64,000 bases of DNA from IMG/VR virus record IMGVR_UViG_3300027770_000026, positions 124,001-188,000 of that record; one strand, 5' to 3'. The notes under the pieces were generated by a model. The model worked only from the letters and a program-made list of their open reading frames with translations. It was not told where the DNA came from and made no database searches. This document shows positions 5,992 to 37,855 of this stretch, in pieces (position 1 is the first letter of the stretch; each line of letters begins with the position of its first letter). The position numbers and the translations under genes are program-made.

Positions 5992-7752
5992 CTATTTGAG
6001 CCCCAAGCCGTTGCGTGTGGCTTGGTAAAGTGTTTGGCCTTTTACTTTCAGTTTTGAGTTCACACCTGTTAATTGGAAGAAGCGTTTTTCATCACCGGCT
6101 GCTGCAGCTTCACGTGCCTTACTGCCGCTAATACCTTCTACGCCCTTGCTGTCTGGATCACGTTCGCCGCTGCTGGCAAAGTTTAGCACCACATGTTCGC
6201 GTCCTTTTGGACCACGAGCAAAGTCTGTAGTACGCACCAGACCACTGTTCCAACTGTTGAGTAGTTTTTCGATACTCTTTGGTCCCGCACCAATTCGATC
6301 CGATCCACCCACAAAGGTCATGTTACGATAACCCTGTTCGTATAGATAGTTGGCTGCGTCAATTGGTGTTTTGAATGCGCCCGATATAATATTCCCTGCG
6401 TATGCTGGATAGATCTGTTTGATAAATTCTGCTTTGGTTTGTGGATCCAACGGATTCTCATCATTATCAACAGTACTGCTGAGGAATATAAATGCCTTAT
6501 CACCACCTGCTTCCACAGTAGTTTGCATCAATTGCTTGTGTCCAAGTGTTGGTGGATTCATTCTACCAAAGCAAAATACTGCTTTGGGCATGGTGCTCTT
6601 GGTTGCAATCTCTTCCGGAGACACTGCAAACTTGGCGCGCAATGCTCGTGTAAAACCTAATCGGTCTACCAACTTGACATTACCACCACCAAATACATAG
6701 CCTTCATGTCCGGCGTCGCCGTTGATCTCAGCATGCACTGCGCTGTTCTTTACCTGCTTGTCTACTTGTTGTTTAACATGTAGCTTGAGATCTGTGAGTA
6801 CAGCCCACATTTCCCACAATGCTTCAAGACCTTTGGCTCCATCTTTTTGATATAGCCAACCGTCTTTGTTTTCGCCCAGCAGTTTCTTTGCTGCCGCAGG
6901 GCTTAGTTGTACTTGGAGATAATCCATAAAGCGAGGCACAATGCGAGAGCTTACATCATTCTCGTCAATCATTTGTGAAATAAACTTGCTCATTGCGGTA
7001 AGCACAGTCTTGGCCTTCATGCCTGCAAGGTCATTGATAAACTTGTTAACAGTGTCTGTATTACTTGCAACTGTACGTTTGGCTGCGGACAACTGTTGCT
7101 TGCCGATTGTAACCTTAGGTGTGTCCTTCATCTCACCCGTAAAGAACACAATGCCTGCACCTTCGCGTAACCCTTGTAATCCACGTAGAGGAATACTAGC
7201 CGATGTTAAGCTAGGGAAGAATGTGTGTACAGCAATACCGCCGTTGCTACGAGCAATGTCCTTACCAAGTGGAGTTTCCACTCCCACAGAGTATTTTACT
7301 GTGCGTGGCTGGAATACGTATTCGCCATTCTTTGTGTCTGGTTTTCCATACCACATGAGGTCGCCAAACCAATACTGGTCTGCTTTCTTAGGTACAATCT
7401 TTTCTAGCAAAGGGCGTATTGCGTCCTCTGCTTCCCATAATTCTACACGTTGAGCGCCACGTGGTTCGTCATATGCACGTATGGTACTAAACTCTGCTTG
7501 GCCTTTGGCTACTTTAGCAAATTGATAATGGTCAACAAATACTACCTTACCTGCAGCATCACGACCAAATACAATGCCTACACTGCCGTCCCATTTAATG
7601 GACAGTTCTTGCGGATTGGCTTCTAGATTAACTAATGCTTCTAACGCTCGCTTGCCACCATCGGGTTCTGTGACCCAGTCCTCGATGTGAGCTGTACCTG
7701 CTTCAAGCAGCGTACGCTTTGCTTTATGCTGCAATACTTCAAATATTTTCAT
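5992..7752 (-). CDS. fusion: ligase-type nucleotidyltransferase domain (KWDG; DUF6267-like) plus HxGH cytidylyltransferase-like domain
   Basis: SIKWDG, GHEGYV and KLVDR motifs, then FGRMNPPTLGH, GGSDR and ISGSKAR. Likely start MKIFEV at 7752. Confidence 0.75.
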   Translation of the reverse strand: MKIFEVLQHKAKRTLLEAGTAHIEDWVTEPDGGKRALEALVNLEANPQELSIKWDGSVGIVFGRDAAGKVVFVDHYQFAKVAKGQAEFSTIRAYDEPRGAQRVELWEAEDAIRPLLEKIVPKKADQYWFGDLMWYGKPDTKNGEYVFQPRTVKYSVGVETPLGKDIARSNGGIAVHTFFPSLTSASIPLRGLQGLREGAGIVFFTGEMKDTPKVTIGKQQLSAAKRTVASNTDTVNKFINDLAGMKAKTVLTAMSKFISQMIDENDVSSRIVPRFMDYLQVQLSPAAAKKLLGENKDGWLYQKDGAKGLEALWEMWAVLTDLKLHVKQQVDKQVKNSAVHAEINGDAGHEGYVFGGGNVKLVDRLGFTRALRAKFAVSPEEIATKSTMPKAVFCFGRMNPPTLGHKQLMQTTVEAGGDKAFIFLSSTVDNDENPLDPQTKAEFIKQIYPAYAGNIISGAFKTPIDAANYLYEQGYRNMTFVGGSDRIGAGPKSIEKLLNSWNSGLVRTTDFARGPKGREHVVLNFASSGERDPDSKGVEGISGSKAREAAAAGDEKRFFQLTGVNSKLKVKGQTLYQATRNGLGLK

Positions 7753-7756
7753 GCTG

Positions 7757-8551
7757 TTACTTACTGTGTGGGAATAGATGCTTGACTGCGTTCCACTTCT
7801 TAGGAACAACTTTCAGCACACGTTCCAAACCTGAGATACTGGATATGTCGCGACCATTCGCATGTGTGCCCACCATAAGTTTAGCAACGCCATCCTTATC
7901 TGCCCAACTAACTAAGACTCTGCCAGTTTCACGATCTACTACGCCCTTGTCTGGACTTAGCTGTAGCGCACTGTTTGGCTTTCCCTTGGCGTCAACAATT
8001 TCTGTCTTGCCGCTAACGGGACTAGGTGTCATCTTGATCAGTGTGGGCCATATTTCTAACCAAAGGTCTCCGCCGCGCATAGTAGGATCAGTGGAGTAGT
8101 CCATCTGATGTCCTTTAATTGCAATGGCTGCATCAGGTTTAACAATTAGGTCCACTTGTGCAAACTTGTCTTGATCAAATCTCACAACACAGTTAAGTGA
8201 CGCTCCGTTGTTTTTGATACCTTTCTCAGTAAGAGCTTGTGCCAACTTCTGCTTGCTACCTTTAAGGTCCTTATCGGAAAATGCACTTAGTACATCTTTT
8301 TCATCTAGCATGATGTCAATGTCGCCAGAATCTTTTTTACGATTGTTTGGGTCGTAGTATGGATGTGTTTCATCCCATATGCCCGCGCCGCCCATAGTCC
8401 AGTCGGCATGCTTGACGCCCACTGCAAGTAGTATCTTAGACAACTTGTCTTTGATTTCTTTAAAGTCTTTTTTAGTGACCCGTGTGACAGATACGCCCAT
8501 CTTCTCAGCGGCCTTCTGACTCATCTCTTGCAGTAGTTCTTGTATCTTCAT
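7757..8551 (-). CDS. Pol-beta-superfamily nucleotidyltransferase-like protein
   Basis: GGAG...DSGDIDI and QVDL motifs. Confidence 0.7.
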   Translation of the reverse strand: MKIQELLQEMSQKAAEKMGVSVTRVTKKDFKEIKDKLSKILLAVGVKHADWTMGGAGIWDETHPYYDPNNRKKDSGDIDIMLDEKDVLSAFSDKDLKGSKQKLAQALTEKGIKNNGASLNCVVRFDQDKFAQVDLIVKPDAAIAIKGHQMDYSTDPTMRGGDLWLEIWPTLIKMTPSPVSGKTEIVDAKGKPNSALQLSPDKGVVDRETGRVLVSWADKDGVAKLMVGTHANGRDISSISGLERVLKVVPKKWNAVKHLFPHSK

Positions 8552-8554
8552 GCG

Positions 8555-10756
8555 TTACTCTGCTCGTGCTTTGAGATGCTTGAGGCTCTTGATTGCGTCA
8601 CGTGCCATTGTGTCCTTTACTGCAGGCTTTTGCTTGTCATGCTTTTCTAAGAAGTTCTTGATAACTGTCATTGATACGTAGTGAGATGTCCCATCTTCAA
8701 AACGTACTTTATGATTACCATCTACGTCCTTAGCTTTACGTAGTTGCATTACAATGTGTGGGATCTTGTCATCATCCGCATCATCTTCTTTATCGTCATC
8801 CTTTGCTTCGTGCAATGGATCATCTTCGTAGAAGTCGTTAGGTGAACGATGGCCATGATGTTCTGTTGAACCACGAACCATTTCGTACTCAACATAATCC
8901 TTAACACGATTGATATAGTCGGCTGCCAGAGTAATCTTGGCCTGTACCCAACCTTCTAGCTCGCCCATACTGTCAAGCATGTTGTGCAAGTCACTTGCGT
9001 TCTTTACCATCTGGTACAGTTGTGACTGTGCCATTTGAACTTCATGATCATCTCTCACATCTAGCATGACCTGATGACCTTCTTTTATAACTTTGGCTTT
9101 TTTCTTTCTAGACTCTTGTACTGGCTGCTCAGGTTGTGCAGTTTCGTCACCGGGTGCAGGTAGTGCAGCAGGTGCTGGTTCCTCTGCTGGCATTTCTTCT
9201 GTATCATCTGCAGCATCCTTTGCTGCACTAATTGCTTCCTTCATGCCCAACGGATCCGTAACCCATGCTCCTAGCAACTTGCGATAAGAAATACCTGACT
9301 CTTCTGATACTTCGTGAATTGCATCGTACTGCTTGTCTAGATCATAGTCTCCGCCTAGTTTTTCGTGAATATCCGATAGTGCAGACTTAACTTCACTTTC
9401 GTCTTCGCCACGTTGCTCGCGGTCTTCTCTGGTTATGATCTGAGTAAATGGAATTGCACCTGCTGGGGTAATAATTATTTTCTTTTTTGTATCAACCTGA
9501 ATTGGGCCTGGTTTGAATTTTTGCTGACCACCTGCACCTGGCATTTGCCCTGGTTTCTGCTGCATCTGCTGTTGTTGCGCTTGTTGTGGTTGTTGCTGTT
9601 GTCCTGGCGCTGGCTGCTGTTGACTTGCCATACCTTGACCAAAAGAACCAACTGCTTGTCCAGCAACATTTGCACCTTTGACTACTGCATTACTTGCCAT
9701 ATTGCCTGCAGCTTGTGCGCCTTTGACTACTGCATTACTTGCCATATTACCTGCAGCTTGTGCGCCTTTAGCTACTACGTTACCTGCAGCTTGTGCGCCT
9801 TTAGCTACTACGTTACCTACAGCTTGTGCTCCTTTTACTGCAGCAGTGCCCAAAGCCTTTGCACCCTGTACTACTGCGCCACCAACACGGGCAGCACCTG
9901 TAGCTAATGCTCCAGCGCCTGCAGCTAATGCTGGAAGAATTTCATCTATTTGTTCTTCGCCCATGTACACTTCGGGTTCGTTGTTGGGCTTCTTACCTGG
10001 CTTTGGCTTCGGCTTTGGCTTCGGCTTTGGCTTCAACACTCCAAATGGATCAGTGTCTTGCTTTGGTTCAACAATTGGTGATAAACTTTTATCTTTTGGA
10101 TCTATTGGTTTACGTATTAGTACTTCGTGAATACTCAAAGGTTGAAATGCCTTACTGAACCATTCGCGTACTGCTGATTCATCCATACCAGCACTCAGAC
10201 GAACACGAGCCGGTACGTTCTTAGCATAAGCAGAATCGTATATAACGCTCCACTCCTCAGATACCATTTCCTTATTATCGCATTCGCACGGCATTGCTTC
10301 ACACACTGGGCAAGCATCCTCGCCTTCTTTTACTTGATAGTTCTTGCCATCTACCTTGAATGACTTCTTGTGTTGCATCTTAGCAGCAGCAAGTGCGCCA
10401 CTAAACTCGTTGCCTTCTTCCATGTCATCTTCGTCAACTAGGTTTTCGGCAATACGTGTCTCTTCGTCGTGTGCGCCTTTTGCAGAATTTAATTCATCTG
10501 CAAAGTCTGCAAATCCGTTCTTTTTAGAAAGGCTATCAAACCCGCTCTTCACTTCATCATGACTTACTCCACGCATGCCGCCAGCGACCCGTGCAGTAAC
10601 CTTATCGGGAGTAGCAGTAGGCTCGGGGCGACTTAATACATCTGAGTGTATTGTTTTTAGTGCGCCTTCAACGTCTTCAGTAATCATACCTTTTTCTTTA
10701 GTGGACGGTGTATTAATTACCGATAGCCATTTCTTCATGTTTTCTTGAGTTGTCAT
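8555..10756 (-). CDS. modular low-complexity protein, probable internal head/ejection protein
   Basis: 733 aa made of short modules separated by hydrophobic-x-E sites. CPVC..PCEC motif, PK, Q-rich and Gly/Ala repeats. Lies in a late operon. Confidence 0.7.
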   Translation of the reverse strand: MTTQENMKKWLSVINTPSTKEKGMITEDVEGALKTIHSDVLSRPEPTATPDKVTARVAGGMRGVSHDEVKSGFDSLSKKNGFADFADELNSAKGAHDEETRIAENLVDEDDMEEGNEFSGALAAAKMQHKKSFKVDGKNYQVKEGEDACPVCEAMPCECDNKEMVSEEWSVIYDSAYAKNVPARVRLSAGMDESAVREWFSKAFQPLSIHEVLIRKPIDPKDKSLSPIVEPKQDTDPFGVLKPKPKPKPKPKPGKKPNNEPEVYMGEEQIDEILPALAAGAGALATGAARVGGAVVQGAKALGTAAVKGAQAVGNVVAKGAQAAGNVVAKGAQAAGNMASNAVVKGAQAAGNMASNAVVKGANVAGQAVGSFGQGMASQQQPAPGQQQQPQQAQQQQMQQKPGQMPGAGGQQKFKPGPIQVDTKKKIIITPAGAIPFTQIITREDREQRGEDESEVKSALSDIHEKLGGDYDLDKQYDAIHEVSEESGISYRKLLGAWVTDPLGMKEAISAAKDAADDTEEMPAEEPAPAALPAPGDETAQPEQPVQESRKKKAKVIKEGHQVMLDVRDDHEVQMAQSQLYQMVKNASDLHNMLDSMGELEGWVQAKITLAADYINRVKDYVEYEMVRGSTEHHGHRSPNDFYEDDPLHEAKDDDKEDDADDDKIPHIVMQLRKAKDVDGNHKVRFEDGTSHYVSMTVIKNFLEKHDKQKPAVKDTMARDAIKSLKHLKARAE
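9676..9831. repeat. coding tandem repeats (2x45 nt plus 2x33 nt; KGAQAAGN units)
   Basis: Units start at 9676, 9721, 9766 and 9799. Confidence 0.9.
9999..10034. repeat. 12-nt tandem repeat x3 (GGCTTTGGCTTC; encodes KP repeats)
   Basis: Direct observation. Confidence 0.9.
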
Positions 10757-10770
10757 GAGTTAGTTAATCC

Positions 10771-11217: not shown

Positions 11218-11232
11218 TCTCCGCTAGTGTTG

Positions 11233-11871
11233 TTATTTAGCGAAGTTAAAAGACTTTTTGGTATACTCTGCACGGGTCCATCCCATGAGATACCTAGCTT
11301 TCCAATCGTTTTGTGCAAAGCCCTGCAGGTGCTGCCATTCTCCTTGATGCTTGCGTATTTGTTGTGCAAGATCCTGCCAATCTTGTTGAGTTAACCAGCT
11401 TTCAGTTTGCAAGCGTTTATCATTGATGCGATTGAGATCATAATCGTCTAGCTCAATATGCAGCACTTCAACCGCGTCGCCGGTGTCATCCAAATGATCC
11501 ATAGCAAAGTCAAAGCCCCATTTAGGTTTAGTCTGTGCCATAAAAGCTGCACCTGGGTGATTATAGCATTTAATTTGGGCTAATGCATCTTCCGCAAAAT
11601 CACAGCGGTGTAACAGCATGCAGTGATCTAGGTGTAATCCATTTTTAATAATAGGCAGTAGCTCTAGCCAGGGATTCTGAAACGCCCAATGATTGAGGCA
11701 GTCTGATAAGGCAAAATAGTTGTCTTGATATAACTTGCGTTCGGCTACTGTAAGTTCAAATCCATCTTTGTCGTAGTAGTTAAAGTCGCTTCGCCTAACA
11801 TTGTGTGCTTCGCCCCGGCATGTAATATCCGCGCAAAAGCCCGCACCCGTAGATCGCTTTAACATAGTCAC
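11233..11871 (-). CDS. hypothetical protein
   Basis: 212-aa ORF in operon (YDKDGFEL, KPKWGFDF). Start may be ATG 11865. Confidence 0.75.
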   Translation of the reverse strand: MTMLKRSTGAGFCADITCRGEAHNVRRSDFNYYDKDGFELTVAERKLYQDNYFALSDCLNHWAFQNPWLELLPIIKNGLHLDHCMLLHRCDFAEDALAQIKCYNHPGAAFMAQTKPKWGFDFAMDHLDDTGDAVEVLHIELDDYDLNRINDKRLQTESWLTQQDWQDLAQQIRKHQGEWQHLQGFAQNDWKARYLMGWTRAEYTKKSFNFAK

Positions 11872-11875
11872 ATGT

Positions 11876-12442: not shown

Positions 12443-12465
12443 GTGAGTATTTATTGATCTTTAAT

Positions 12466-13344: not shown

Positions 13345-13422
13345 TGTAATGTCTCCCAGTTATTTAGCATGCAGTGCGAGATTATTTTGGTAAAATTCAA
13401 ATAAATAACAAGAGGGCATTTT

Positions 13423-13644
13423 ATGAGAAAACTACTACTAACTGCTGCGTTCGTGCTGTTAACTGCGGGCTGTAGCGAACATTATCGTTATGCTTGCCAA
13501 GATCCAGCACACTGGAATGACGCAGAATGCAAGCGTCCACGCTGCGAAGTTGACGGCAATTGCCGCGATGAACTAACCGGTGGAGTCAGCGAGAAGATAC
13601 TAGACCCCGATCACCACAAGACTGAGGAACCCGTAAATGAGTAA
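13423..13644 (+). CDS. Cys-rich lipoprotein in lysis cassette (possible o-spanin-like)
   Basis: Signal peptide II with lipobox LTAGC plus four further Cys. Confidence 0.7.
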   Translation: MRKLLLTAAFVLLTAGCSEHYRYACQDPAHWNDAECKRPRCEVDGNCRDELTGGVSEKILDPDHHKTEEPVNE

Positions 13645-13918
13645 TCCACGTTATACAAGCGATGAGCTACACGCTCGTTTGAAGTTTTTTATTGGCGTAA
13701 CACTGTCGCTAACACTAGTTGGTATTGTGTTTGTTGTACTGTACAGCCTAATATTTGTAACACAGCCAATTGGTGTACAAAGTCCAAATGACGCAGAATT
13801 CTTTAAGCTGGTAACTCCAATTGCAACATTCCTCACAGGTCTACTGTCGGGCATAATGTTTGGCAAGAGCCCAGACGAGCCCAAGCCTGAAGCTCCACCA
13901 GAAGATACTATTGCATGA
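13637..13918 (+). CDS. two-TM membrane protein, holin candidate
   Basis: Two hydrophobic segments, overlapping the endolysin start. Confidence 0.6.
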   Translation: MSNPRYTSDELHARLKFFIGVTLSLTLVGIVFVVLYSLIFVTQPIGVQSPNDAEFFKLVTPIATFLTGLLSGIMFGKSPDEPKPEAPPEDTIA

Positions 13919-15036
13919 GTTTAAGTACACTACAAGAAAAAATGGGCGTTACAGCCGACGGAGCGTTTGGTAAAGGAACGCTCACTGCGGCTATGAAATA
14001 TTTCAAGCTAACACCTGATCGAGCAGCACACTTCTTTGGACAAGTTGGGCACGAAACAGGCGGCTTTAAAAGTTTCACCGAAAATCTCAACTATAGTGCA
14101 GAAGGCTTACTGAAGACATTTAGCAAGTACTTTGATACTGCTAGTGCTGCTGCTTGCGCACGTAATCCCGAGAAGATTGCCAATGTAGTGTACGCTAATC
14201 GCATGGGCAATGGTGATAGGGCTAGCGGCGATGGATGGAAGTATCGTGGACGTGGTGCACTACAGTTAACTGGCAAGGAAAACTATCAAGCACTAGCAGA
14301 CGCACTGGGCAAGCAGGAGATCATGCAGGATCCAGACCTAGTAGCAGACGACTATGCGTTTGATAGTGCCATGTTCTTCTTTAACAAGAACAAGCTATGG
14401 GCTATATGTGATCACGGTGTTAATGATGCTGCCATACTCGCACTAACTAAAAAGATTAATGGCGGCACACATGGACTAGATGATCGTACAGAGAGAACTA
14501 AGAAATATGCAGAATGGCTCAAAGGCGAAACGGCACCTGCTACAACACCAGCAGCCGCTGGCGGTAATATGCTAAGTGAAAATTTTGCACTACGAGACTT
14601 CATCAAAAGCGAAACTGCGACACGTAAGAAGATAGACAATACTCCATCACCTGCACATCTTGCAGCACTTAAAGCTGTGGCTAAGAACATATTAGAGCCT
14701 GTGCTTGCTCACTACAAAAAACCCATACGCATCAACAGTGCGTATCGTGGACCTGCACTTAACAAAGCAGTGGGCGGTAGTGCTAAGAGTCAACACTGCA
14801 ATGGTGAAGCTGTGGACTTTGAAATTGACGAGTTATCTAATCCAGAACTAGCCATGTGGGTTAGTAAGAATTTAGAATTTGATCAGTTGATACTAGAGTT
14901 TTATAATCCCAAAGAGGGACCAAATAGTGGGTGGGTGCATTGCAGCTATAAGGCTACAGGTACCAATCGTCGTCAAATCCTAACTGCTGTAACAGCAGGA
15001 GGAAAGACAGTTTACAAACCAGGATTTGTACTATGA
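13915..15036 (+). CDS. bifunctional endolysin: PG-binding segment, GH19 glycosidase and C-terminal peptidase M15A
   Basis: ADGAFGKGT; HET, YRGRGALQLTG.NY and INGG (GH19); TAPATTPAAAGG linker; NSAYR, SQH..GEAVD and WVH (M15). Confidence 0.9.
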   Translation: MSLSTLQEKMGVTADGAFGKGTLTAAMKYFKLTPDRAAHFFGQVGHETGGFKSFTENLNYSAEGLLKTFSKYFDTASAAACARNPEKIANVVYANRMGNGDRASGDGWKYRGRGALQLTGKENYQALADALGKQEIMQDPDLVADDYAFDSAMFFFNKNKLWAICDHGVNDAAILALTKKINGGTHGLDDRTERTKKYAEWLKGETAPATTPAAAGGNMLSENFALRDFIKSETATRKKIDNTPSPAHLAALKAVAKNILEPVLAHYKKPIRINSAYRGPALNKAVGGSAKSQHCNGEAVDFEIDELSNPELAMWVSKNLEFDQLILEFYNPKEGPNSGWVHCSYKATGTNRRQILTAVTAGGKTVYKPGFVL

Positions 15037-15305
15037 CCGTAACAAATTGGATTTTAAAAGTAACAGTGGGTACACTGGCGTGCATTGTCGTTGCTGTAGT
15101 TGTTGTTCTTATGGGTGGATTGTTTAATCCCATTGTAGACAACAACAAAATCTTTGAAATTATTGGTCCAGCATTTAGCACAGTGATTGGCGCGTTTGTT
15201 GGCTTGCTTGGCGGTATTTCTCTAAACAAGGCAGATGCTGCGGCTGCAGTTGAAGCTGATGCTAAAGCAGCGGAAGAGCAAAAGAAGAAGGACGAAGCCA
15301 AGTAG
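15033..15305 (+). CDS. two-TM membrane protein, holin/antiholin candidate
   Basis: Two hydrophobic segments and a charged C-tail, overlapping the endolysin stop. Confidence 0.6.
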   Translation: MTVTNWILKVTVGTLACIVVAVVVVLMGGLFNPIVDNNKIFEIIGPAFSTVIGAFVGLLGGISLNKADAAAAVEADAKAAEEQKKKDEAK

Positions 15306-15320
15306 TATTAAATATCCTGC

Positions 15321-15770
15321 ATGCAGGATAATACCAACTACTGGCGCAGCTTAACTTGGCCGGCCGCCCCCAACGATAACGACTACGAGTTGTTTGCGCA
15401 GCATTGCCAAGGTACAGTGCTGCTGATGGGCAGTACCCGTTTACTACTACCCCTAGCTAGTGAAGCATGGGATACTGAACCAGTGTATGATGATAGTAAA
15501 ATTAAGACTAGAGATTGGTTCTCCTTAGACACACACTATGATACCATCATCATTGATGGCGCACTATCATTTGGGCAAGAGTTTACAGCGCGTCTGCTGC
15601 CCATTGTGCTAGCACATTGTGATTGCTTTGTAGCGCGTGTGTTTTTACGCACCACTTGGCCCGCACGTTATGCTGTTTACTTTCCACGCGCACACGAACT
15701 TGACCCACAACCACAGGAGATTGAAGTAAACGATGTTTACTCATTTTATATATGGAACAACAAATACTAG
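15321..15770 (+). CDS. hypothetical protein with degenerate SAM-methyltransferase-like fold
   Basis: VLLMGST, WD, RDW and YDTIIIDG pattern. Confidence 0.55.
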   Translation: MQDNTNYWRSLTWPAAPNDNDYELFAQHCQGTVLLMGSTRLLLPLASEAWDTEPVYDDSKIKTRDWFSLDTHYDTIIIDGALSFGQEFTARLLPIVLAHCDCFVARVFLRTTWPARYAVYFPRAHELDPQPQEIEVNDVYSFYIWNNKY

Positions 15771-16342
15771 TAATGTACTCAGGCGGATTAGATAGTCTCG
15801 GTACCATCTACCAACTGCTAACTGATCCCCAGTACAAGGATTACACATTGCATGTACATCACGTACATCAACGCAATGTTGAGAATAGAAATCGTGCGGA
15901 AGCTATTGCAGTTGAACTTGTAGTCAATGAACTAGAGCGTATGGGTTACAATTTTGTCTACAGTGAAAGTGAAATTGCATCCCAGCCCTATAATGGCAGC
16001 TTCATGTACGACACCGACAGTGTTAACTTTTTTGCAGGTTACATCTGCTCCGTAAACCCCAACATAAAACATGTGGCAATGGGCATGAATGCCAACGATG
16101 AAAATCACAATCTAAATGAACGACGTGTACGAGCTGATGCTATACTTGCTGCGTTTACCCCAGTAAAGAAGATCTATCCCGTACTCAACATGAGCAAGCG
16201 TGAGATTTATGATATGTTACCTGCAAATTTAAGAAACATGTTTTGGAGCTGTCGTACACCCGTGTACACAGACACCAAGGTTAATCCCTGTGGTCGTTGT
16301 AAGACCTGTGTACAGCTAAGAGAAGCAGGGATTAGGGGCTAG
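15752..16342 (+). CDS. QueC-like PP-loop ATPase
   Basis: YSGGLDS PP-loop, YP.L..SK.EI, WSC...PCGRCKTC zinc site. Confidence 0.8.
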   Translation: MEQQILVMYSGGLDSLGTIYQLLTDPQYKDYTLHVHHVHQRNVENRNRAEAIAVELVVNELERMGYNFVYSESEIASQPYNGSFMYDTDSVNFFAGYICSVNPNIKHVAMGMNANDENHNLNERRVRADAILAAFTPVKKIYPVLNMSKREIYDMLPANLRNMFWSCRTPVYTDTKVNPCGRCKTCVQLREAGIRG

Positions 16343-23926: not shown

Positions 23927-24094
23927 TTAATTTTTGCGTTCACGCAACAATCGTTGATATCTTGCTGCGGCCCACGTTAAACTAGCACTACTAGGGTGTG
24001 CTTGGAATTTTTCCGCAGCTTCCTGCAGAGCTTGTTGTTTAAGTGATTTGTTTGTATCATTTAAACGATGCGAAAACATTTCCTGCAACTTCAT
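23927..24094 (-). CDS. 55-aa protein MKLQEMFSHRLND... (below ORF-track cutoff)
   Basis: ATG overlaps the upstream stop (TAATG). The ORF fills the gap exactly and has an MKLQE N-terminus. Confidence 0.7.
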   Translation of the reverse strand: MKLQEMFSHRLNDTNKSLKQQALQEAAEKFQAHPSSASLTWAAARYQRLLRERKN

Positions 24095-29419: not shown

Positions 29420-29980
29420 TTATAGTTTCGGACGCGATTTATTACCCAGTGGGCTCATGTTCTTTGAGCCGTACACAGGGCCAGCGTCAGCTTTGGGCTT
29501 ACCGCCTGCAATTTCATATTTGAATTCACTCTTGTTCTTCTTGACCAGTTCCTGATTATACTCGTCGCCGTAATACTTTTTACCGTCTTCTGTCTTTTCG
29601 TAGTCGGTACCTAGTACTGCTTTGCCGCTCAGTTCCTTTTCTTCACGATCAGTTTCTAAGGGTTCTTCTGGTGTGCGAACAATAATCTTGTTCATGGTAA
29701 TCTTCAATCCATTTGCTAGCACGTCACGTATTGACTCGCGAGCAGCGGGAAGCCCCAACACTACATCTACCATGTAAACTTCTGTGGGACCAATATCTGC
29801 AAAGTCCAGCGCACGACCTTGTAGGATTGTTTTCTTGACAGTTCCTACTTTCTTAACGTCAAATTTAGCGAGAAGCGATTCCATTTTGTCCTGCATGTCG
29901 GCGTCCACCGGTACAGCAAACTTAATACGGAATATGTATTCCTTCTCAGCTTCTTCGATATATTCAAATAGTTTTTTCAT
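29420..29980 (-). CDS. hypothetical late protein (MKKLFEYIEEA)
   Basis: ATG 29980 follows TAAATA at 30001-30006 and AAGGG. The track start at 30061 overlaps the neighbouring gene. Confidence 0.75.
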   Translation of the reverse strand: MKKLFEYIEEAEKEYIFRIKFAVPVDADMQDKMESLLAKFDVKKVGTVKKTILQGRALDFADIGPTEVYMVDVVLGLPAARESIRDVLANGLKITMNKIIVRTPEEPLETDREEKELSGKAVLGTDYEKTEDGKKYYGDEYNQELVKKNKSEFKYEIAGGKPKADAGPVYGSKNMSPLGNKSRPKL

Positions 29981-29999
29981 AATGATAGCCCTTGATGCT

Positions 30000-30479
30000 T
30001 TATTTAGCGTTTTCTTTTGAATTCTTAATGGTTGCGAGTAATTGATTTCTATTCCCCACAATACGACCCTGTGTTTCAGTCACGCCGTTAGGTCCATTTG
30101 TGCTGCTAGCTTTGGCCCGCAAGGCCTGCAATTGCAAGCTTACTGTGCGCAGTTTAGCGTCAGTCTTACCCTGCTTGGCGTCTAGCGCAGTCTTTAATAA
30201 TTGCGCCGCAACTGCTAATAGCTCTGCACTATGGCGCGGTTCTACGTTCATTGCTAGCTCTTTAATTTCCCTGTACGTGGCCATTGCTTCGTCTGCAATG
30301 TGATCCACTTCCCCTTCTGTTTCGGGAATGTTGCGTACCTGAGGTAATGCTTTGTCTACACGGGTACCTAAATCATTTAATTCTGATTCCTCTGTAATTT
30401 CTAAGGGCAATGCAAAATCCGTAGTTTCCCCGCTTGCCACAGTTGACATATTAAACAATTCTTCTAATTGTTTGTTCAT
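30000..30479 (-). CDS. putative terminase small subunit
   Basis: 159-aa helical protein (ELAMNVEPR..AELL..A.QLL, VG.RNQLL) resembling gp16-type proteins, near terL. Confidence 0.5.
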   Translation of the reverse strand: MNKQLEELFNMSTVASGETTDFALPLEITEESELNDLGTRVDKALPQVRNIPETEGEVDHIADEAMATYREIKELAMNVEPRHSAELLAVAAQLLKTALDAKQGKTDAKLRTVSLQLQALRAKASSTNGPNGVTETQGRIVGNRNQLLATIKNSKENAK

Positions 30480-31245: not shown

Positions 31246-31246
31246 T

Positions 31247-32801: not shown

Positions 32802-32819
32802 ATGTGTATCTCCATATGT

Positions 32820-32827
32820 TATTTATA
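32820..32827 (-). promoter_or_regulatory. T4-type late promoter TATAAATA
   Basis: Exact T4 late consensus upstream of a GGAGA RBS. Confidence 0.8.
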
Positions 32828-32838
32828 GCCAAAAAGAA

Positions 32839-32859
32839 AGGGGCAAAAAATGCCCCCTT
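32839..32859 (-). terminator. intrinsic terminator after the tail tube gene
   Basis: AAGGGGCA/TGCCCCTT stem followed by TCTTTTT on the minus strand. Confidence 0.75.
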
Positions 32860-32885
32860 CCCATAAGCAGATGTACCAGCAGGTA

Positions 32886-33503
32886 TTAGCCTGTTGATAG
32901 CACGTTGATTGAACGGCCAACGGCCGCGCCAACACCATTCTCCATTGGAATCTGGAGTGCGTTATCAAACTTAATTGTCATTGTAATTTCAACAGCGCCT
33001 GATTCAGCATATGATATTGCACCATAGTCTACGCTGTTTAGGTAGCAACCGTAGCATTCCCATGTTTCAAGAACATTTGGAGTATATGCGCCGTTGCCGC
33101 CGTCTAGCATTTCTAAGCGTGTTACAAACTTGTAGCTTGTACCTGCGCTTGCACTTGCTTGCTCGAAGAAGTCCAATTGACGCTGTAGCTGCTCACCAAC
33201 GAGCTTGCTAACCTGCCCCTGAACGTCGTCACGTACAACCAGGTTCATGTCTTGCCATGAATGCTTGCCTGCTAGCTTGACCTTGCTGTTGTACACATCT
33301 AGTACAACTTCTTCAAAGCTAACGTTTGGACGTGATACGCTAACTACCTGCTTGGTCAATTCGCTTCTAGGACTTGTAACGCCAAAATTCTCAAGTGTAA
33401 CGCGGAAGCGATACTTGAGTTTAGGCATCAATAGGCCCTGAGAGGTTGCACTCTGGTCACTGGCCAGTGGTACGGTAAATCTTGTTAAACTTGTAATACT
33501 CAT
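32886..33503 (-). CDS. gp19: tail tube protein (gp19-like)
   Basis: PKLKYRFRV, RP.VSF, AGK.SW and WECYGCY motifs, immediately downstream of the sheath. Confidence 0.85.
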   Translation of the reverse strand: MSITSLTRFTVPLASDQSATSQGLLMPKLKYRFRVTLENFGVTSPRSELTKQVVSVSRPNVSFEEVVLDVYNSKVKLAGKHSWQDMNLVVRDDVQGQVSKLVGEQLQRQLDFFEQASASAGTSYKFVTRLEMLDGGNGAYTPNVLETWECYGCYLNSVDYGAISYAESGAVEITMTIKFDNALQIPMENGVGAAVGRSINVLSTG

Positions 33504-33591
33504 GTTATAAGCTCTCCTTAGTGAGCATCTGCTGTGTGCAATTATTTAGCCATTTGAAATATTTTTTGATGAGGGTATTTTAGTCAAAAAA

Positions 33592-33611
33592 ATAGGGGCC
33601 GTAGCCCCTAT
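33592..33611. terminator. intrinsic (possibly bidirectional) terminator after the sheath gene
   Basis: ATAGGGGC-CGTA-GCCCCTAT flanked by A and T runs. Confidence 0.85.
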
Positions 33612-33631
33612 CTTTTGCTTGGCGTAATTGC

Positions 33632-36600
33632 TTAGGCCAATGCTTCTCCAGTATTCTTGATACGGATTGGGATGTAGATGAATTCCACGGCCTTCACAGG
33701 CTTAATGGCAATATCAATCCACAGCTCGTTACGATCAATGCGCTCTGGTGTATTGTTGCTGGTATCGCACACTACGAGGAAGTCGTACAATGCACGTAGT
33801 CCAACTAGCTCGTTGAAGAATGTTTCAACTGCTTGTTTGACTTCGTTACGTGTCAATGTATCGTTTGGCTCGAAGAAGTATGGTTTTACTAACACTTCTA
33901 GTTGCTTGCGAACATACACAATCAAACGTGCTACGTTCACACGGTCTAGGGCACTTGCAGTTACTGCTAGTGTCTTCTGACCCCAAACAACTATTCCCCC
34001 TGTTGGCTGGATGACAATTGGGTTTAGTCTGTTCTGATACATTACATCGCGAACGCCCTGTCCTAGTGGACTTGGTACGAACTCACCCTCCGAGCTTAGG
34101 TAGCCAACGCTTGTGGCATTGTTAACAACACCACGACGTAGACCAGCTGGGGCAAACCATGGATACGCAACTTGATCGTTTAGGGCGATTGTGCGCAGCA
34201 TGATGTGACTTGCTGGTACCATTACATCTTCACCTGTTAGGTTTGATGTATATGCGTTTGGATAGAACACTGCAGAGTATTCATTTAGTGTTACTAGTCC
34301 TTCTTCACTGTTTGTTGGAGCATTGTTTGCATTGGTTGCCCAATTAAACAAGTCTGTACCAGTTGGCTGCAAGCGGAATGGAGGGTCAACTAGTACAAAC
34401 GCTGTGCCCTTACGGTCAGTGTTTAGTACTACCATTTCGTCCAGCAATTCTGGATAACCTGGGCATGCAATGAGTGTAAAGTCATTTTGCTCTTGGCGTG
34501 CATCCAAGCTAGCGTTGAGACCTGCTTGCATTGCTTCAACGATAACACGACGTTGTGCCTTGCGGCCCATGTATGGTGAACCGTCTGACTTGACTCCTAC
34601 CTTGCTTACCCATGCATCACGTAAAGTTACTGTAGCGTCAAAGTAGTTAACCTTGTACTCTTTGACATTGTAACCGCTGCGGCGTGTGTTGAACAACAAC
34701 ATACCTTGTGGGTACAAGTCTGGATCTGGTGCATCGCTGTCTACGTAACTGCTATCCAACAGGTCCACGATGTCTGAACTGTCTGATGCAGCATCGCCAT
34801 CACGGTAACGAGCATCAGCAAACAAGACACCATTTTCTGTTGTTTGGTCCGTGTTGTTGATTGTTTCCCATGTGCTTGTGCCTGCATTGTAACGCTTGAT
34901 TAGAGGATAGTTTTCTAGATCACTAGTGTCAATCCACAAATCGTTTGTTGCTAATGCAGTCACGCCGTCGCTCTGGTACTCTGGCTGAGTTGCAGAAACG
35001 ACTGGGCCCAATGGGTCAGTTAACCCAAACTCATCGTGATAACCAGTCCACGAGCTACCGTTGTGTACCATGATGTCTACTTCGTCTACCAGGCTGTTGT
35101 ACCACAATGTACCATCAACTGGTGTAGTACGAGGTTCTGCAACACCTGCAGTGTATGTCAATGTCAACCAATTAGTAACTAGACCAGCTGTGATGCCGCA
35201 AGCTGCCAATGGTGAGCCGCCGCCGTCGGCTAAGACGAAGTCATTACCCTTACTGTGTGCAATGGTCAATGTGTTATCTGTATTAACTGTCATTGTCATG
35301 TTTGGAATACTTGCACGACCAAATGCTGTTGCAAGACCTGCAGCAGTTAAAGGATCACCAGCACCAGCGTTATCCAATGTTACTGTGTAGGTAATTCCAC
35401 CAACAATTACATCAAAGTCGTCACCATCCACTAGTGTAGGACTTGTTGTTATGCCGCTAGTTGTTAGCGGAATACCAGTTGCGTCCCACTTGACTATTTC
35501 CATCTGCAAAGTATCAAGGTTTGCAATGTCATATGGCATGTATAGCGCATTAGGAGCGATAGTGTTAGCCGATACACCATCTGTTGCTAGTCCTGCTATC
35601 GCAGGATCGTTAGCAAAGTCAGCCGACAGAGCATATAGCGGAGTTGATACTGTTACCCAATCACCTGCTGCACTCATACGCTTAACAGCGATGTTTGCAC
35701 CATTGTTTGGGCTAGTTGTCTTGAACCAAATTGATCCAGTTGGACGTGGATTTGCACCACCTGTCTTGAAGCCTGGAACAATTGTGTGCTTGTTCTGATG
35801 TAGATCAACTGTCTTGTATTCTACGTTTTCTGTCAGACCAAGCAGTGCTGACAAACCGTTTGTAGTAGCCGAATCAATTGTTACGCTAATCGAACTGTAA
35901 ATGACCAGTTTGTTGCTTTCAATTATAGCCTTCATGTTTGCATTAAGTGTACCGTTGGCATTGATTGCATCAACTAGGTCTTCAAGGTAGTTATTTGGGG
36001 CGTTGGGCACTGCGATGGTCGTGCCATTGATTACCAAGTCCCATGTATCGGTAATTGCAGTAGTAACTTCCACTGTTCCGCGCACTGTTGCGTGACGACG
36101 CTTCCATTCAGCTGTACCAATTAGTGCCCAGTTCTGATTTAGATCTGACCGACCGCCTTTATAGTAAGCTTTGATTGCCCCACTAACGATTGACACAGCG
36201 TAGTCGCCTGTACTACCTGTTTGTGGTAGTGGCAATCCGGCTGTTAACTCTGCACTGGATGTGATTAGTAATGGAGATACTACAGTGAATACCTGATCAG
36301 CTGCATTCCATTCCTGCAAGCCCCATGCTGTTTCTGCGAGGTCCAACCAGTATGTACCTGTTGCAACTTCGCCTGTTGCGGCACTCGAACTTGGTACTAG
36401 TTCTGTTAGATTTACATCTGGACGCATGATGTAGGCCTTGCTGGCCACGCCCAGGAAGCTGTATGCTGCTAGCAGACCGTACTCATTGAGTTCGTCGCCT
36501 TGAACAACTGCTCCACTAACTTTAGTAAAGCTTGGTACGCCAAAGTTTGTTGCTAGTTCACGTTGGCTTGTAACCAACTGCACCTTATTAATATTTGCTG

Positions 36601-36751
36601 CCAATGTACCGGTAGCTGTACCGGTTCCTGCAGGATTAGTCTTATCTTGCGCAGATGGCGCAATGATAAGCGGGACTGGGCCCGCCGCTGCAGGCAAATA
36701 TTGACTTTCGTCAATAATTGTAATTTCTGTTCCAACCGAAGTTAAAGCCAT
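33632..36751 (-). CDS. gp18: contractile tail sheath protein (gp18-like) with large insertion
   Basis: PWFAPAG.RRG, NPI, WGQKT, DRVNVARL, CDTSNNTP and KPVKAVEFI motifs. Confidence 0.95.
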   Translation of the reverse strand: MALTSVGTEITIIDESQYLPAAAGPVPLIIAPSAQDKTNPAGTGTATGTLAANINKVQLVTSQRELATNFGVPSFTKVSGAVVQGDELNEYGLLAAYSFLGVASKAYIMRPDVNLTELVPSSSAATGEVATGTYWLDLAETAWGLQEWNAADQVFTVVSPLLITSSAELTAGLPLPQTGSTGDYAVSIVSGAIKAYYKGGRSDLNQNWALIGTAEWKRRHATVRGTVEVTTAITDTWDLVINGTTIAVPNAPNNYLEDLVDAINANGTLNANMKAIIESNKLVIYSSISVTIDSATTNGLSALLGLTENVEYKTVDLHQNKHTIVPGFKTGGANPRPTGSIWFKTTSPNNGANIAVKRMSAAGDWVTVSTPLYALSADFANDPAIAGLATDGVSANTIAPNALYMPYDIANLDTLQMEIVKWDATGIPLTTSGITTSPTLVDGDDFDVIVGGITYTVTLDNAGAGDPLTAAGLATAFGRASIPNMTMTVNTDNTLTIAHSKGNDFVLADGGGSPLAACGITAGLVTNWLTLTYTAGVAEPRTTPVDGTLWYNSLVDEVDIMVHNGSSWTGYHDEFGLTDPLGPVVSATQPEYQSDGVTALATNDLWIDTSDLENYPLIKRYNAGTSTWETINNTDQTTENGVLFADARYRDGDAASDSSDIVDLLDSSYVDSDAPDPDLYPQGMLLFNTRRSGYNVKEYKVNYFDATVTLRDAWVSKVGVKSDGSPYMGRKAQRRVIVEAMQAGLNASLDARQEQNDFTLIACPGYPELLDEMVVLNTDRKGTAFVLVDPPFRLQPTGTDLFNWATNANNAPTNSEEGLVTLNEYSAVFYPNAYTSNLTGEDVMVPASHIMLRTIALNDQVAYPWFAPAGLRRGVVNNATSVGYLSSEGEFVPSPLGQGVRDVMYQNRLNPIVIQPTGGIVVWGQKTLAVTASALDRVNVARLIVYVRKQLEVLVKPYFFEPNDTLTRNEVKQAVETFFNELVGLRALYDFLVVCDTSNNTPERIDRNELWIDIAIKPVKAVEFIYIPIRIKNTGEALA

Positions 36752-36828
36752 GTGTTTATATCCTCTTGTAATGACTCGCGGTATGCACCGTGTGTCAATA
36801 TTTAGCGGATAGGGGCTTTTTTATGACG

Positions 36829-37455
36829 TTATGCGGACTCAAACATGCATCTAATGCGATATTTAAGCAGATCCAGCGGACCGTTGTTTTCGATTACGTT
36901 ATCAAACTCAGTTCCAACCCAAGACCATTCACTAGCATGTACATTTTGTACTAGCCAAATCTTGTCTGCAGTATCATGATTGACATTAGCGTTAACTGCA
37001 CGGTCATACCAGTTGGGATTGGGTCCGCGCTTAACCCACCAAACTTCGCCACCTAGATTGCGAATGGTGCGTACTTCGTTTGGGAAACGGCAATCGGGAA
37101 TAATAATGTTAAAGGGATTATTACGGATTCTATTCTCTACGCTAGCAGCCCAGATATCATCGTGAAAGCTCATGCGACATACTTCTGTGCCCCACTGCTG
37201 TAGTACCCATCGCGGCGTTAAGTGGGATATGTGCAATCTGGTAGCCCACCACGTGTCTACTTGCTCGCGCCATACGCGACTAGCTTCTGTGTCGCCTTCT
37301 AACAAGTGCCTTGGCCAGCCAAATACTGCTGCTACAGAATCCTTAAGTGTATCCGCAAAGCTAACTTTGGTATAGGCATATTCTTCATCCAGTATGTCTG
37401 CTACTGTGCCCTTGCCAGAGCCAATGAATCCGCAAATTGCAATAATCTTATTCAT
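36829..37455 (-). CDS. deoxynucleoside monophosphate kinase (T4 gp1-like)
   Basis: GFIGSGKGT, FAD.LK, TPR..LQ..GTE, DCRFPNE and H.SE motifs. ATG at 37455. Confidence 0.92.
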   Translation of the reverse strand: MNKIIAICGFIGSGKGTVADILDEEYAYTKVSFADTLKDSVAAVFGWPRHLLEGDTEASRVWREQVDTWWATRLHISHLTPRWVLQQWGTEVCRMSFHDDIWAASVENRIRNNPFNIIIPDCRFPNEVRTIRNLGGEVWWVKRGPNPNWYDRAVNANVNHDTADKIWLVQNVHASEWSWVGTEFDNVIENNGPLDLLKYRIRCMFESA

Positions 37456-37461
37456 GCTGTA

Positions 37462-37489
37462 ATTATAACAGCAAACACACAAATATCAA
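37462..37489 (-). promoter_or_regulatory. sigma70-type promoter TTGATA-N16-TATAAT with extended -10 (TGn), 6 nt before ATG
   Basis: Direct observation. No SD between promoter and ATG. Confidence 0.7.
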
Positions 37490-37855
37490 CTATTTTTGTT
37501 TGGGAGTTGGACTATTCTTTTGAGTATCGCTGGGTTCTTGGCTAGTGGGGGTAGATATTAACTTAGCACTCACTCCCATTAGTTTGGCTGCTAGTTCAAT
37601 GATGCGTTGCTCTTCTGGTGCATAGCTGACCATTGTCAGTTGTTCACCAAATGCACTTTCTCGTTCAAAGTGTAAATTAGGATCACCGCTTGCTGCTGCT
37701 GCAGCTAATGCTAAACCGTAACGATATTGTGTGTAGAAATCATTGTTCTTTAATTGTGGGATAACATAAGTTGCGGGCAGAGTTTCTTGAACAGCCGGAG
37801 CAAGTGACCCTGTATTCTGTTCGCAAATTAAGATTAATTCTTGCAGGCTTTTCAT
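37490..37855 (-). CDS. hypothetical late protein (MKSLQEL N-terminus)
   Basis: 121-aa ORF coupled to the neck gene. Confidence 0.75.
   Translation of the reverse strand: MKSLQELILICEQNTGSLAPAVQETLPATYVIPQLKNNDFYTQYRYGLALAAAAASGDPNLHFERESAFGEQLTMVSYAPEEQRIIELAAKLMGVSAKLISTPTSQEPSDTQKNSPTPKQK

What the first reader, a model, noticed from the sequence alone, without database searches (positions are those of the whole stretch)
7740..37855. Shared MKxxE(L/M/Y/V) N-terminal tag on unrelated late proteins
Seen: MKIFEVL (7752), MKIQELLQE (8551), MKLQEMF (24094), MKKLFEYIEE (29980) and MKSLQELILICE (37855). These proteins are otherwise dissimilar and all lie in late operons. Inference: a capsid-targeting code cleaved after a nearby hydrophobic-x-E site by a gp21-like prohead protease, defining the injected cargo set.
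Basis: partly seen in the sequence, partly recalled or inferred. Interest (0 to 1): 0.6.

Follow-up and report, generated by a model that had tools for sequence, protein, structure and literature searches.

The report
Capsid-targeting tags of a jumbo phage
The tag could therefore predict which proteins this uncultured phage group packages, although that is not yet proven.

Summary
The five N-termini exist as described. All are on the minus strand, and each ATG lies 0-25 nt after the upstream stop. They belong to a genome-wide, non-random tag, M-[K/R]-[I/L/V/A]-x-[E/D]-hydrophobic. It occurs in 20 of 312 ORFs of the 266-kb parent phage genome against 1.6 expected, and in about 30 when alternative starts are allowed. 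Carriers are unrelated to one another.

Outside the window the genome encodes a T4-type head module with a gp21-family (Peptidase_S77) protease. The tag matches the T4 capsid-targeting sequences of IPI/II/III and the gp24 propeptide, including a hydrophobic-x-Glu cut site at its end.

In orthologue families, the tag and cut site are the best-conserved N-terminal features. Variable linkers separate them from the mature domain. Some homologues lack them and start exactly at the predicted mature end.

In PA5oct, the nearest cultured relative with a virion proteome, tagged ORFs are about 10-fold enriched among virion proteins (8/90 vs 4/430).

Cleavage, packaging and injection remain untested here, some carriers are enzymes, and look-alike N-termini occur on T4 proteins not among its known processed head proteins.

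The parts
5992..7752 (-). Tagged gene 1 (586 aa): DUF6267 domain plus C-terminal cytidylyltransferase-like domain
   Evidence: Pfam DUF6267 covers residues 22-370. PHROG cytidyltransferase covers 385-584. The 120 best homologues were examined (of 205 with E<=1e-5).
7702..7752 (-). Tag, linker and predicted cut site of gene 1 (17 codons ending L-L-E)
   Evidence: In 119 anchored homologues, 112 keep M-x-[LIVA]-x-[ED]-hydrophobic at the N-terminus. 114 have hydrophobic-x-E immediately before the conserved domain start, and the spacing varies from 11 to 34 residues. Cyanophage orthologues lack the tag.
7757..8551 (-). Tagged gene 2 (264 aa), no family assignment
   Evidence: No PHROG or Pfam match. 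27 homologues found.
8525..8551 (-). Tag of gene 2 (9 codons ending L-Q-E)
   Evidence: In its family many members carry a 9-residue tag ending hydrophobic-x-E directly before the conserved mature start. Tagless members begin with Met exactly at the position of that Glu.
23927..24094 (-). Tagged gene 3 (55 aa). Its ATG overlaps the stop of the upstream virion-protein gene. The tag occupies 24074-24094.
   Evidence: No homologue beyond an identical contig. It is the weakest of the five, because the first hydrophobic-x-E comes only at residues 23-25.
29420..29980 (-). Tagged gene 4 (186 aa), virion structural protein family
   Evidence: Matches phrog_14802 'virion structural protein'. Its PA5oct orthologue, the CDS at 126689-127291, was detected in virions by ESI-MS/MS.
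29951..29980 (-). Tag of gene 4 (10 codons), the closest match to the T4 IPII/IPIII capsid-targeting sequence
   Evidence: Identical to the T4 sequence at M1, K2, E6, I8, E10 and A11, with hydrophobic residues at positions 4 and 7. In 20 orthologues E10 is invariant and Y7 and L8 are at least 90% conserved, out of only 5 invariant columns in the protein. The AF2 model has a helix at 2-11 ahead of a confident core.
37490..37855 (-). Tagged gene 5 (121 aa), unknown function. The tag occupies 37820-37855 and ends I-C-E.
   Evidence: Seven of the nine BLASTP hits near the terminase genes of related phages begin M-[KR]-x-x-E-[IVF]-[IL]-x-E; an eighth keeps only the first six positions and the ninth lacks the tag.
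29996..30007 (-). T4-late-like promoter element (12-mer) 16 nt upstream of gene 4
   Evidence: The element xTAAATA is the most enriched upstream 7-mer in the genome. This exact 12-mer occurs three times in the genome, each time 26-28 nt from the ATG of a tagged gene. Sequence checked.
11234..11240 (-). Late-like promoter element heading the same-strand operon that contains genes 2 and 1
   Evidence: No terminator-like site above the chance level lies in between.
38628..38634 (-). Late-like promoter element upstream of the neck-protein gene that precedes gene 5
   Evidence: The PA5oct orthologue of the neck gene is a virion protein.

Best explanation
The shared N-terminus is a T4-type capsid-targeting propeptide. 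It is a short amphipathic segment, M-[K/R]-hydrophobic-x-[E/D]-hydrophobic-(hydrophobic)-x-E, that carries otherwise unrelated proteins into the assembling prohead, probably by binding the scaffolding core. The phage's gp21-family (Peptidase_S77) prohead protease then removes it by cutting after the Glu of a hydrophobic-x-Glu site at the end of the tag, or at the end of a short variable linker.

What is shown:
- The tag is real, is statistically non-random, acts at the protein level, and sits on unrelated proteins.
- It is conserved together with the cut site across orthologue families, and it is modular, because tagless homologues exist.
- The genome has the matching protease, scaffold and capsid genes.
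- In a cultured relative the tag marks virion proteins.

What is inferred:
- That the tag binds the prohead core.
- That it is cut at the predicted Glu.
- That the carriers, enzymes included, end up inside the head and are delivered to the host.
For: (1) Statistics. The tag occurs at 20/312 N-termini against 1.6 expected. In 79 related environmental phages it occurs at 29/1085 against 2.4 expected. 26 of those have the full 9-mer ending hydrophobic-x-E, against 0.08 expected.

(2) Selection at the protein level. K/R, I/L and E/D are each encoded by several different codons among carriers.

(3) Matching machinery. Peptidase_S77 scores 90.6 bits, over its cut-off. It aligns to T4 gp21 (5JBL) with the His and Ser motifs present. 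There is a Gp23-type capsid protein, and portal, small core protein, scaffold and capsid genes are syntenic with PA5oct and T4.

(4) Likeness to the experimentally defined T4 tags, read from NC_000866: IPII/IPIII, IPI and the gp24 propeptide. The roles of CTS residues 4 and 7 (targeting) and 8 and 10 (processing) come from PMC9026906. PMC5694885 calls the 10-20-residue propeptides of gp24 and the IPs CTS.

(5) Cut site. A hydrophobic-x-E ends within residues 7-13 in 14/23 carriers, against 50/289 other N-termini and 12% of internal windows.

(6) Family conservation and modularity.
- Gene-4 family: E10 is invariant.
- Gene-1 family: 114/119 members have the site directly before the domain, with variable spacing, and cyanophage orthologues are tagless.
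- Gene-2 family: tagless members start exactly at the predicted mature end.
- Deoxyribonucleotidase family: 83/120 members are tagged, with a variable linker placing the catalytic HAD motif 13-28 residues from the Met, and cultured-phage homologues align only from residue 7-13.

(7) Virion association in PA5oct. 8/90 MS-detected virion ORFs carry the tag against 4/430 others (odds ratio 10.4, Fisher p = 1.7e-4). Three tagged G000 proteins have PA5oct homologues detected in virions, two of which also match the tag pattern and the third only loosely.

(8) The main carrier cluster (genome 84-116 kb) is dense in late-like promoters. It is syntenic with the PA5oct block that is richest in virion proteins.

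(9) Tail, sheath, tube and baseplate orthologues do not carry the tag.
Against: - There is no proteomic or N-terminal data for this phage. PA5oct's peptide-level data were not available, so cleavage is unobserved in the whole clade.
- Several carriers are enzymes of a kind not usually packaged: deoxyribonucleotidase, NUDIX, ClpS-like and methyltransferase-like proteins.
- Six of 25 carriers have no hydrophobic-x-E within 17 residues (one search list), including gene 3 of the finding.
- Four of 12 PA5oct carriers were not detected in virions.
- T4 UvsY and T4 lysozyme e have similar N-termini although neither is among the head proteins the literature read here lists as processed by gp21, so the pattern can arise as an ordinary N-terminal helix.
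- The negative control genome was small: the first 50 kb of T5, with 1 hit in 144 ORFs.
- Direct association of the tag with an own late-like promoter is not significant (8/26 vs 48/286, p = 0.10).
Confidence: 0.7

Rival explanations
1. The tag is an N-terminal recognition signal for something other than the prohead. One example is a degron or adaptor-binding tag for the phage-encoded Clp/FtsH-type proteolytic machinery, timing the turnover of these proteins. Another is a sorting tag for a different phage assembly.
For: The genome and PA5oct encode ClpA-, ClpX- and ClpS-like proteins. One carrier is itself ClpS-like. From memory, unverified here, one class of ClpX N-terminal signals begins Met-basic-hydrophobic. 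Enzyme carriers fit regulated turnover better than packaging.
Against: A degron does not need the hydrophobic-x-Glu site that is conserved exactly at the tag/domain junction. The acidic residue at position 5 is the best-conserved tag position (109/120) and is not part of the remembered ClpX motif. Carriers are enriched in virions in PA5oct. The tag matches proven T4 packaging tags.
Confidence: 0.1
2. There is no dedicated function. The pattern is simply a favourable N-terminal amphipathic helix that belongs to each fold and recurs by convergence or lineage habit.
For: T4 lysozyme e and UvsY have similar N-termini without a known tag role. The AF2 model of gene 4 shows the segment as a helix adjoining the core.
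Against: It would not explain four observations: a 12-fold excess over column-shuffled expectation; the near-absence in 50 kb of T5; the variable-length linkers and tagless homologues that start at the predicted cut; or the virion enrichment.
Confidence: 0.1
3. The pattern reflects selection on the mRNA, such as A/U-rich, unstructured 5' coding ends for translation initiation. This would matter because many genes here lack a Shine-Dalgarno sequence or look leaderless.
For: Only about a quarter of genes have an SD-like site. About 18 genes have the late promoter element only 4-6 nt from the ATG. K, I, N, E and F are encoded by A/U-rich codons.
Against: The conserved positions use synonymous and non-synonymous alternatives that keep the residue class, not the bases: K by AAA/AAG or R by CGA/CGT/AGA, and E by GAA/GAG or D by GAT/GAC. 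Position-specific Glu and the downstream hydrophobic-x-Glu have no mRNA rationale. Carriers are not depleted or enriched for SD (6/26 vs 78/286).
Confidence: 0.05

Closest known systems
Capsid targeting sequence (CTS) of phage T4 internal proteins IPI, IPII and IPIII (Mullaney and Black 1996, as summarised in PMC9026906 and PMC5694885)
   Same: An N-terminal tag of about 10 residues sits on otherwise unrelated proteins. It has a basic residue after Met, hydrophobic or aromatic residues at the two targeting positions, an internal Glu, and ends in [I/L]-x-E where gp21 cuts. The same protease family (S77) and a gp23-type capsid are present. Genes 4 and 5 of the finding are in the same register as the T4 CTS.
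   Different: Most carriers here use a register one residue shorter, and many have an extra variable linker before the cut site. The set is much larger: about 30 proteins, roughly 9% of ORFs, against three IPs plus a few others in T4. It includes recognisable enzymes. Nothing has been tested experimentally in this lineage.
T4 gp24 vertex-protein propeptide (10 residues, removed by gp21)
   Same: After the initial Met-Ala, its sequence follows the K-I-x-E-L-L-x-E pattern. That is essentially the 9-mer consensus found in this phage and in 26 N-termini of related phages.
   Different: gp24 is a shell protein paralogous to the capsid protein. No second Gp23-family gene was found in this genome, and the carriers here are not capsid paralogues.
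Propeptides of phiKZ / SPN3US-type giant phages (PMC5694885, PMC7411985)
   Same: A gp21-related protease cuts after Glu and processes many head and ejection proteins. The propeptides are thought to direct incorporation.
   Different: Those propeptides are mostly longer than 100 residues and the motif is A/S/G-x-E. Here the tags are 8-17 residues and the residue two before Glu is L/I/V.

Membership tests
T4-type capsid targeting sequence / gp21-cleaved short N-terminal propeptide | Sits at the extreme N-terminus, directly after the initiator Met | tested here: met
   All carriers start with the tag. Starts are fixed by upstream stops and by orthologue starts. At internal Met the pattern occurs 4 times in 1596.
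T4-type capsid targeting sequence / gp21-cleaved short N-terminal propeptide | T4 CTS residue pattern: basic residue 2, hydrophobic or aromatic residues 4 and 7 (targeting), I/L at 8 and E at 10 (processing) | tested here: met
   Genes 4 and 5 fit in the same register. In the gene-4 family Y7 and L8 are at least 90% conserved and E10 is invariant. The other carriers fit after a one-residue shift, as T4 gp24 does. The roles of the residues are taken from PMC9026906.
T4-type capsid targeting sequence / gp21-cleaved short N-terminal propeptide | Ends in a hydrophobic-x-Glu site that lies at the boundary with the mature domain | tested here: met
   14/23 carriers against 17% of other N-termini. 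114/119 in the gene-1 family. Tagless gene-2 homologues begin at that boundary. Not met for 6 of 25 carriers, including gene 3.
T4-type capsid targeting sequence / gp21-cleaved short N-terminal propeptide | The genome encodes a gp21-family (Peptidase_S77) prohead protease with catalytic residues, plus a scaffold and a gp23-type capsid protein | tested here: met
   PF03420 at 90.6 bits. Alignment to 5JBL with the His and Ser motifs. PF07068 at 335 bits. Head-module synteny with PA5oct and T4. These genes lie outside the window, at genome 211.8-217.6 kb.
T4-type capsid targeting sequence / gp21-cleaved short N-terminal propeptide | Portable: attached to unrelated cargo proteins and dispensable for their fold | tested here: met
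   No BLASTP similarity between carriers. Tagless homologues exist in three families. Linker length varies.
T4-type capsid targeting sequence / gp21-cleaved short N-terminal propeptide | Carriers are components of the virion head | tested here: inconclusive
   Tested only indirectly, in PA5oct: 8/90 virion ORFs against 4/430 others, and three homologue pairs. The proteome does not separate head from tail, and there are no data for this phage.
T4-type capsid targeting sequence / gp21-cleaved short N-terminal propeptide | The tag is removed in the mature virion and is sufficient to package a foreign protein | not testable with these tools
   This needs N-terminomics and fusion experiments.
phiKZ/SPN3US-type long propeptides | Propeptides mostly longer than 100 residues, with a small residue (A/S/G) two positions before the cleaved Glu | tested here: not met
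   Tags here are 8-17 residues with L/I/V at that position. The definition comes from PMC5694885.
ClpX N-terminal recognition signal (recalled from memory, not verified here) | Met-basic-hydrophobic-hydrophobic-hydrophobic, followed by a hydrophobic residue after five positions | tested here: inconclusive
   Positions 1-3 fit. Position 5 is acidic in 23/23 carriers and position 4 is mostly polar, which does not fit the remembered motif. That motif was not checked against a source.

The most novel reading that the evidence does not exclude
The tag is a readable 'packaging code' for a whole, mostly uncultured clade of PA5oct/RaK2-related jumbo phages. It would mark a large pre-loaded proteome, about 30 proteins or 9% of the genes in this genome. 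That proteome would include ready-made enzymes: a deoxyribonucleotidase, a NUDIX hydrolase, a GH19 wall hydrolase, a ligase-like/cytidylyltransferase fusion and a ClpS-like adaptor. These would be encapsidated, trimmed by the prohead protease and delivered with the DNA. If so, the injected arsenal of thousands of metagenomic phages could be predicted from sequence alone. Evolution would recruit ordinary enzymes into the virion simply by adding or removing a 9-residue tag.
Probability: 0.35. Interest if true: 0.75.

Novelty: new member of a known kind. Interest (0 to 1): 0.55.

Why it matters
T4's capsid-targeting sequence is the textbook case of a portable signal that loads proteins into a phage head, and it is already used to engineer protein-delivering phage particles.

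If the same code operates in the PA5oct/RaK2-related jumbo phages, three things follow.
- It gives a sequence-only way to list candidate head-internal and possibly injected proteins in a clade that is known almost entirely from metagenomes.
- It points to packaged enzymes as part of the infection strategy of large phages.
- It offers a ready tag for loading cargo into jumbo-phage capsids.

I found no paper linking such a tag to this phage group in the searchable library. The PA5oct omics paper does not discuss processing.

The claim can be tested directly in PA5oct, which can be cultured and already has a virion proteome.

Tried and rejected
- **Complex prediction.** There is no result either way.
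- **Fold search.** Foldseek of the AF2 model of gene 4 against the PDB gave only generic ferredoxin-like hits (ribosomal S6, PII) with TM below 0.35. This says nothing about function.
- **Protease paralogue idea.** The conserved start of the DUF6267 domain resembles the protease's His motif. The idea that gene 1 is a protease paralogue was rejected because BLASTP found no similarity.
- **Paralogy among carriers.** Rejected: there is no carrier-carrier hit.
- **Related loci for gene 1.** The search for related loci with gene 1 alone returned only an identical contig. The word search was needed instead.
- **PDB sequence search of gene 1.** No hit.
- **Pfam on ten carriers of the main cluster.** Only one domain was found, GH19.
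- **Sigma-70 promoter and terminator scans** around the five genes were at chance level.
- **PA5oct supplementary peptide tables** are not held.
- **Own late-like promoter.** Association between the tag and a late-like promoter of its own was not significant (p = 0.10).
- **Second virion proteome.** One (RaK2 or CBB) was considered but not fetched, for reasons of cost.
- **T5 negative control.** It covers only 50 kb.


Full report
**Context**

The window is bases 124001-188000 of a 265,892-bp IMG/VR virus record. CheckV estimates it to be about 80% complete. Its large terminase and major capsid protein place it among the jumbo myoviruses related to Pseudomonas phage PA5oct, RaK2, GAP32 and CBB. 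The capsid protein is 62-67% identical to theirs. The window itself is almost all minus-strand structural genes: terminase, sheath, tube, neck, baseplate, fibres and the start of a 4802-residue protein.

**Observation**

All five N-termini are present on the minus strand at the coordinates given. Each ATG lies 0-25 nt after the stop of the upstream gene, and orthologues begin at the same Met. The five proteins, and all other carriers, show no BLASTP similarity to each other.

I laid out the whole genome and called ORFs crudely, which gave 346 ORFs, 312 of them with a usable ATG start and at least 40 residues. The better description M-[KR]-[ILVA]-x-[ED]-[LMYVIF] occurs at 20, against 1.6 expected (maximum 8 in 2000 shuffles). 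It occurs only 4 times at 1596 internal Met residues.

Allowing alternative starts gives about 30 carriers. The densest group, 14 of about 40 genes, lies just upstream of the window at genome 84-116 kb.

The conserved positions are encoded by several different codons. Selection therefore acts on the protein, not the mRNA.

**Machinery**

The genome encodes a Peptidase_S77 (T4 gp21 family) protease at 214606-215238, over the Pfam cut-off. It aligns to the T4 gp21 structure 5JBL with the His and Ser motifs present. A Gp23-family capsid protein lies next to it.

The gene order is portal, small protein, core-like protein, protease, scaffold, capsid. It matches PA5oct and T4. The small protein after the portal carries a tag variant, and its PA5oct orthologue is a tagged virion protein. 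The capsid protein has an I-A-E site just before the conserved mature part. This suggests that the T4-like specificity, cutting after the Glu of hydrophobic-x-Glu, is retained.

**Comparison with T4**

I read the T4 N-termini from NC_000866.
- IPII and IPIII begin MKTYQEFIAE, followed by A.
- IPI begins MKTFKEF.
- gp24 begins MAKINELLRE, followed by S.

According to PMC9026906, the first ten residues of IPIII suffice for packaging. Residues 4 and 7 matter for targeting, and residues 8 and 10 for processing. PMC5694885 calls the 10-20-residue propeptides of gp24 and the IPs capsid targeting sequences.

Gene 4 of the finding matches the IPII/III tag at M1, K2, E6, I8, E10 and A11, with hydrophobic residues at positions 4 and 7. 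Gene 5 is in the same register. Most other carriers, and 26 N-termini in related phages, follow the gp24-like register M-[KR]-I-x-[ED]-I-[IVL]-x-E.

A hydrophobic-x-E ends within residues 7-13 in 14 of 23 carriers. The figure is 50 of 289 for other N-termini and 12% for internal windows.

**Orthologue families**

- **Gene 4.** Among 20 orthologues at 23-35% identity there are only five invariant columns. One is E10, and Y7 and L8 are at least 90% conserved.
- **Gene 5.** Seven of the nine related hits begin with the 9-mer; an eighth keeps only its first six positions and the ninth lacks the tag.
- **Gene 1** (DUF6267 plus cytidylyltransferase-like domain). I examined the 120 best homologues. 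112 of the 119 that could be anchored keep the tag core, and 114 of 119 have hydrophobic-x-E immediately before the conserved domain start. The distance between the two varies from 11 to 34 residues. T4-like cyanophages encode the same domain without any tag.
- **Gene 2.** Many homologues have a 9-residue tag ending hydrophobic-x-E directly before a conserved mature start. Others have no tag and begin with Met at exactly the position of that Glu.
- **A tagged deoxyribonucleotidase outside the window.** 83 of its 120 homologues carry the tag, followed by a variable linker that places the catalytic HAD motif 13-28 residues from the Met. Homologues in cultured phages align only from residue 7-13.

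This architecture has three parts: a conserved tag, a variable spacer, and a conserved Glu site at the domain boundary. It is also optional within a family. That is what a removable targeting propeptide looks like.

**Virion association**

PA5oct is the nearest cultured relative with a virion proteome recorded in its GenBank annotation (93 proteins, PMC7318152). I treated all ORFs alike and allowed any start within the first 40 codons. On that basis 8 of 90 matched virion ORFs carry the tag, against 4 of 430 others (odds ratio 10.4, p = 1.7e-4).

Three tagged proteins of this genome have PA5oct homologues detected in virions. One is gene 4 of the finding, whose homologue fits the tag pattern only loosely; the other two homologues match it. 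The main carrier cluster is syntenic with the PA5oct block richest in virion proteins. Tail and baseplate proteins do not carry the tag.

**Late expression**

The most enriched upstream 7-mers are variants of xTAAATA, which resembles the T4 late promoter. All five genes lie in tightly packed same-strand operons downstream of such elements, and gene 4 has its own. This supports 'late' by inference only.

**Caveats and rivals**

- Cleavage, packaging and injection are all unobserved.
- Carriers include enzymes: a deoxyribonucleotidase, a NUDIX hydrolase, a GH19 hydrolase, a ClpS-like protein and a methyltransferase-like protein.
- Gene 3 and five other carriers lack a nearby cut site.
- T4 UvsY and lysozyme e have similar N-termini, although neither is among T4's known processed head proteins.
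- The outside control was small. The first 50 kb of T5 gave 1 hit in 144 ORFs, against 30 in 773 for this genome.
- A degron or other sorting signal, an ordinary N-terminal helix, and mRNA-level selection were each considered. Each fails to explain the conserved Glu site at the domain boundary together with the virion enrichment.

**Verdict**

The T4-style capsid-targeting and propeptide reading is the best explanation, with confidence about 0.7. It is a new member of a known kind, and I found no report of it for this phage group in the searchable literature. The predicted cargo list is unusually large and rich in enzymes.

Noticed in passing
window 12442 (-), 50381 (-), 15321 (+); also genome 36307, 54431, 76220 and about 12 more: The T4-late-like element xTAAATA[AC] comes in two spacing classes. 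In one it starts 23-31 nt before the ATG and is followed by an AGGAG-type ribosome site. In the other it starts only 10-14 nt before the ATG with no ribosome site, which suggests leaderless or nearly leaderless late mRNAs for about 18 genes.
   Followed up: partly
window 29996-30007 (-); genome 99930 and 115266: The exact 12-mer CTAAATAAAGCA occurs only three times in the 266-kb genome. Each copy lies 26-28 nt upstream of the ATG of a tag-bearing gene.
   Followed up: no
window 50390-64000 (-), continuing beyond the window: A single ORF of about 4800 residues runs off the window. It is homologous to the 3857-residue PA5oct virion protein at 49627-61200 of MK797984.
   Followed up: no
window 13423-16342 (+): A plus-strand six-gene island interrupts the minus-strand structural operons. 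It holds a lipoprotein-signal protein, a 373-residue protein sharing a lysozyme-type domain with three other genes of the genome, and small hydrophobic proteins. It may be a lysis cassette.
   Followed up: no
window 30000-30479 (-): My greedy ORF picker dropped this 159-residue ORF and replaced it with a spurious plus-strand call. It is probably a real gene, and its stop codon lies inside the late-like promoter element of the next gene.
   Followed up: partly
L027 and L107 (IMG/VR contigs from other metagenomes): Contigs of 109 kb and 32 kb from two other metagenomes carry genes 100% identical to the terminase and to tagged gene 1. The same phage therefore recurs across samples.
   Followed up: no
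window 5992-7752 (-) and L109, L110: DUF6267 contains a K-W-D-G motif reminiscent of ligase or capping nucleotidyltransferases. In T4-like cyanophages the DUF6267 part and the cytidylyltransferase part are two adjacent genes, whereas here they are fused.
   Followed up: partly
PA5oct MK797984: 105688, 157529, 260677; 179881-180267: Three tagged PA5oct virion genes are annotated with GTG starts. The hypothetical gene at 179881-180267 would begin with a perfect 9-residue tag if started five codons downstream of its annotated start.
   Followed up: no
genome 84876 (68 aa, between the two ribonucleotide reductase genes): A small tagged ORF sits between the reductase subunit genes. Its first 24 residues alone match the start of PHROG 17311, so the tag region is shared with small proteins of other phages.
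   Followed up: no
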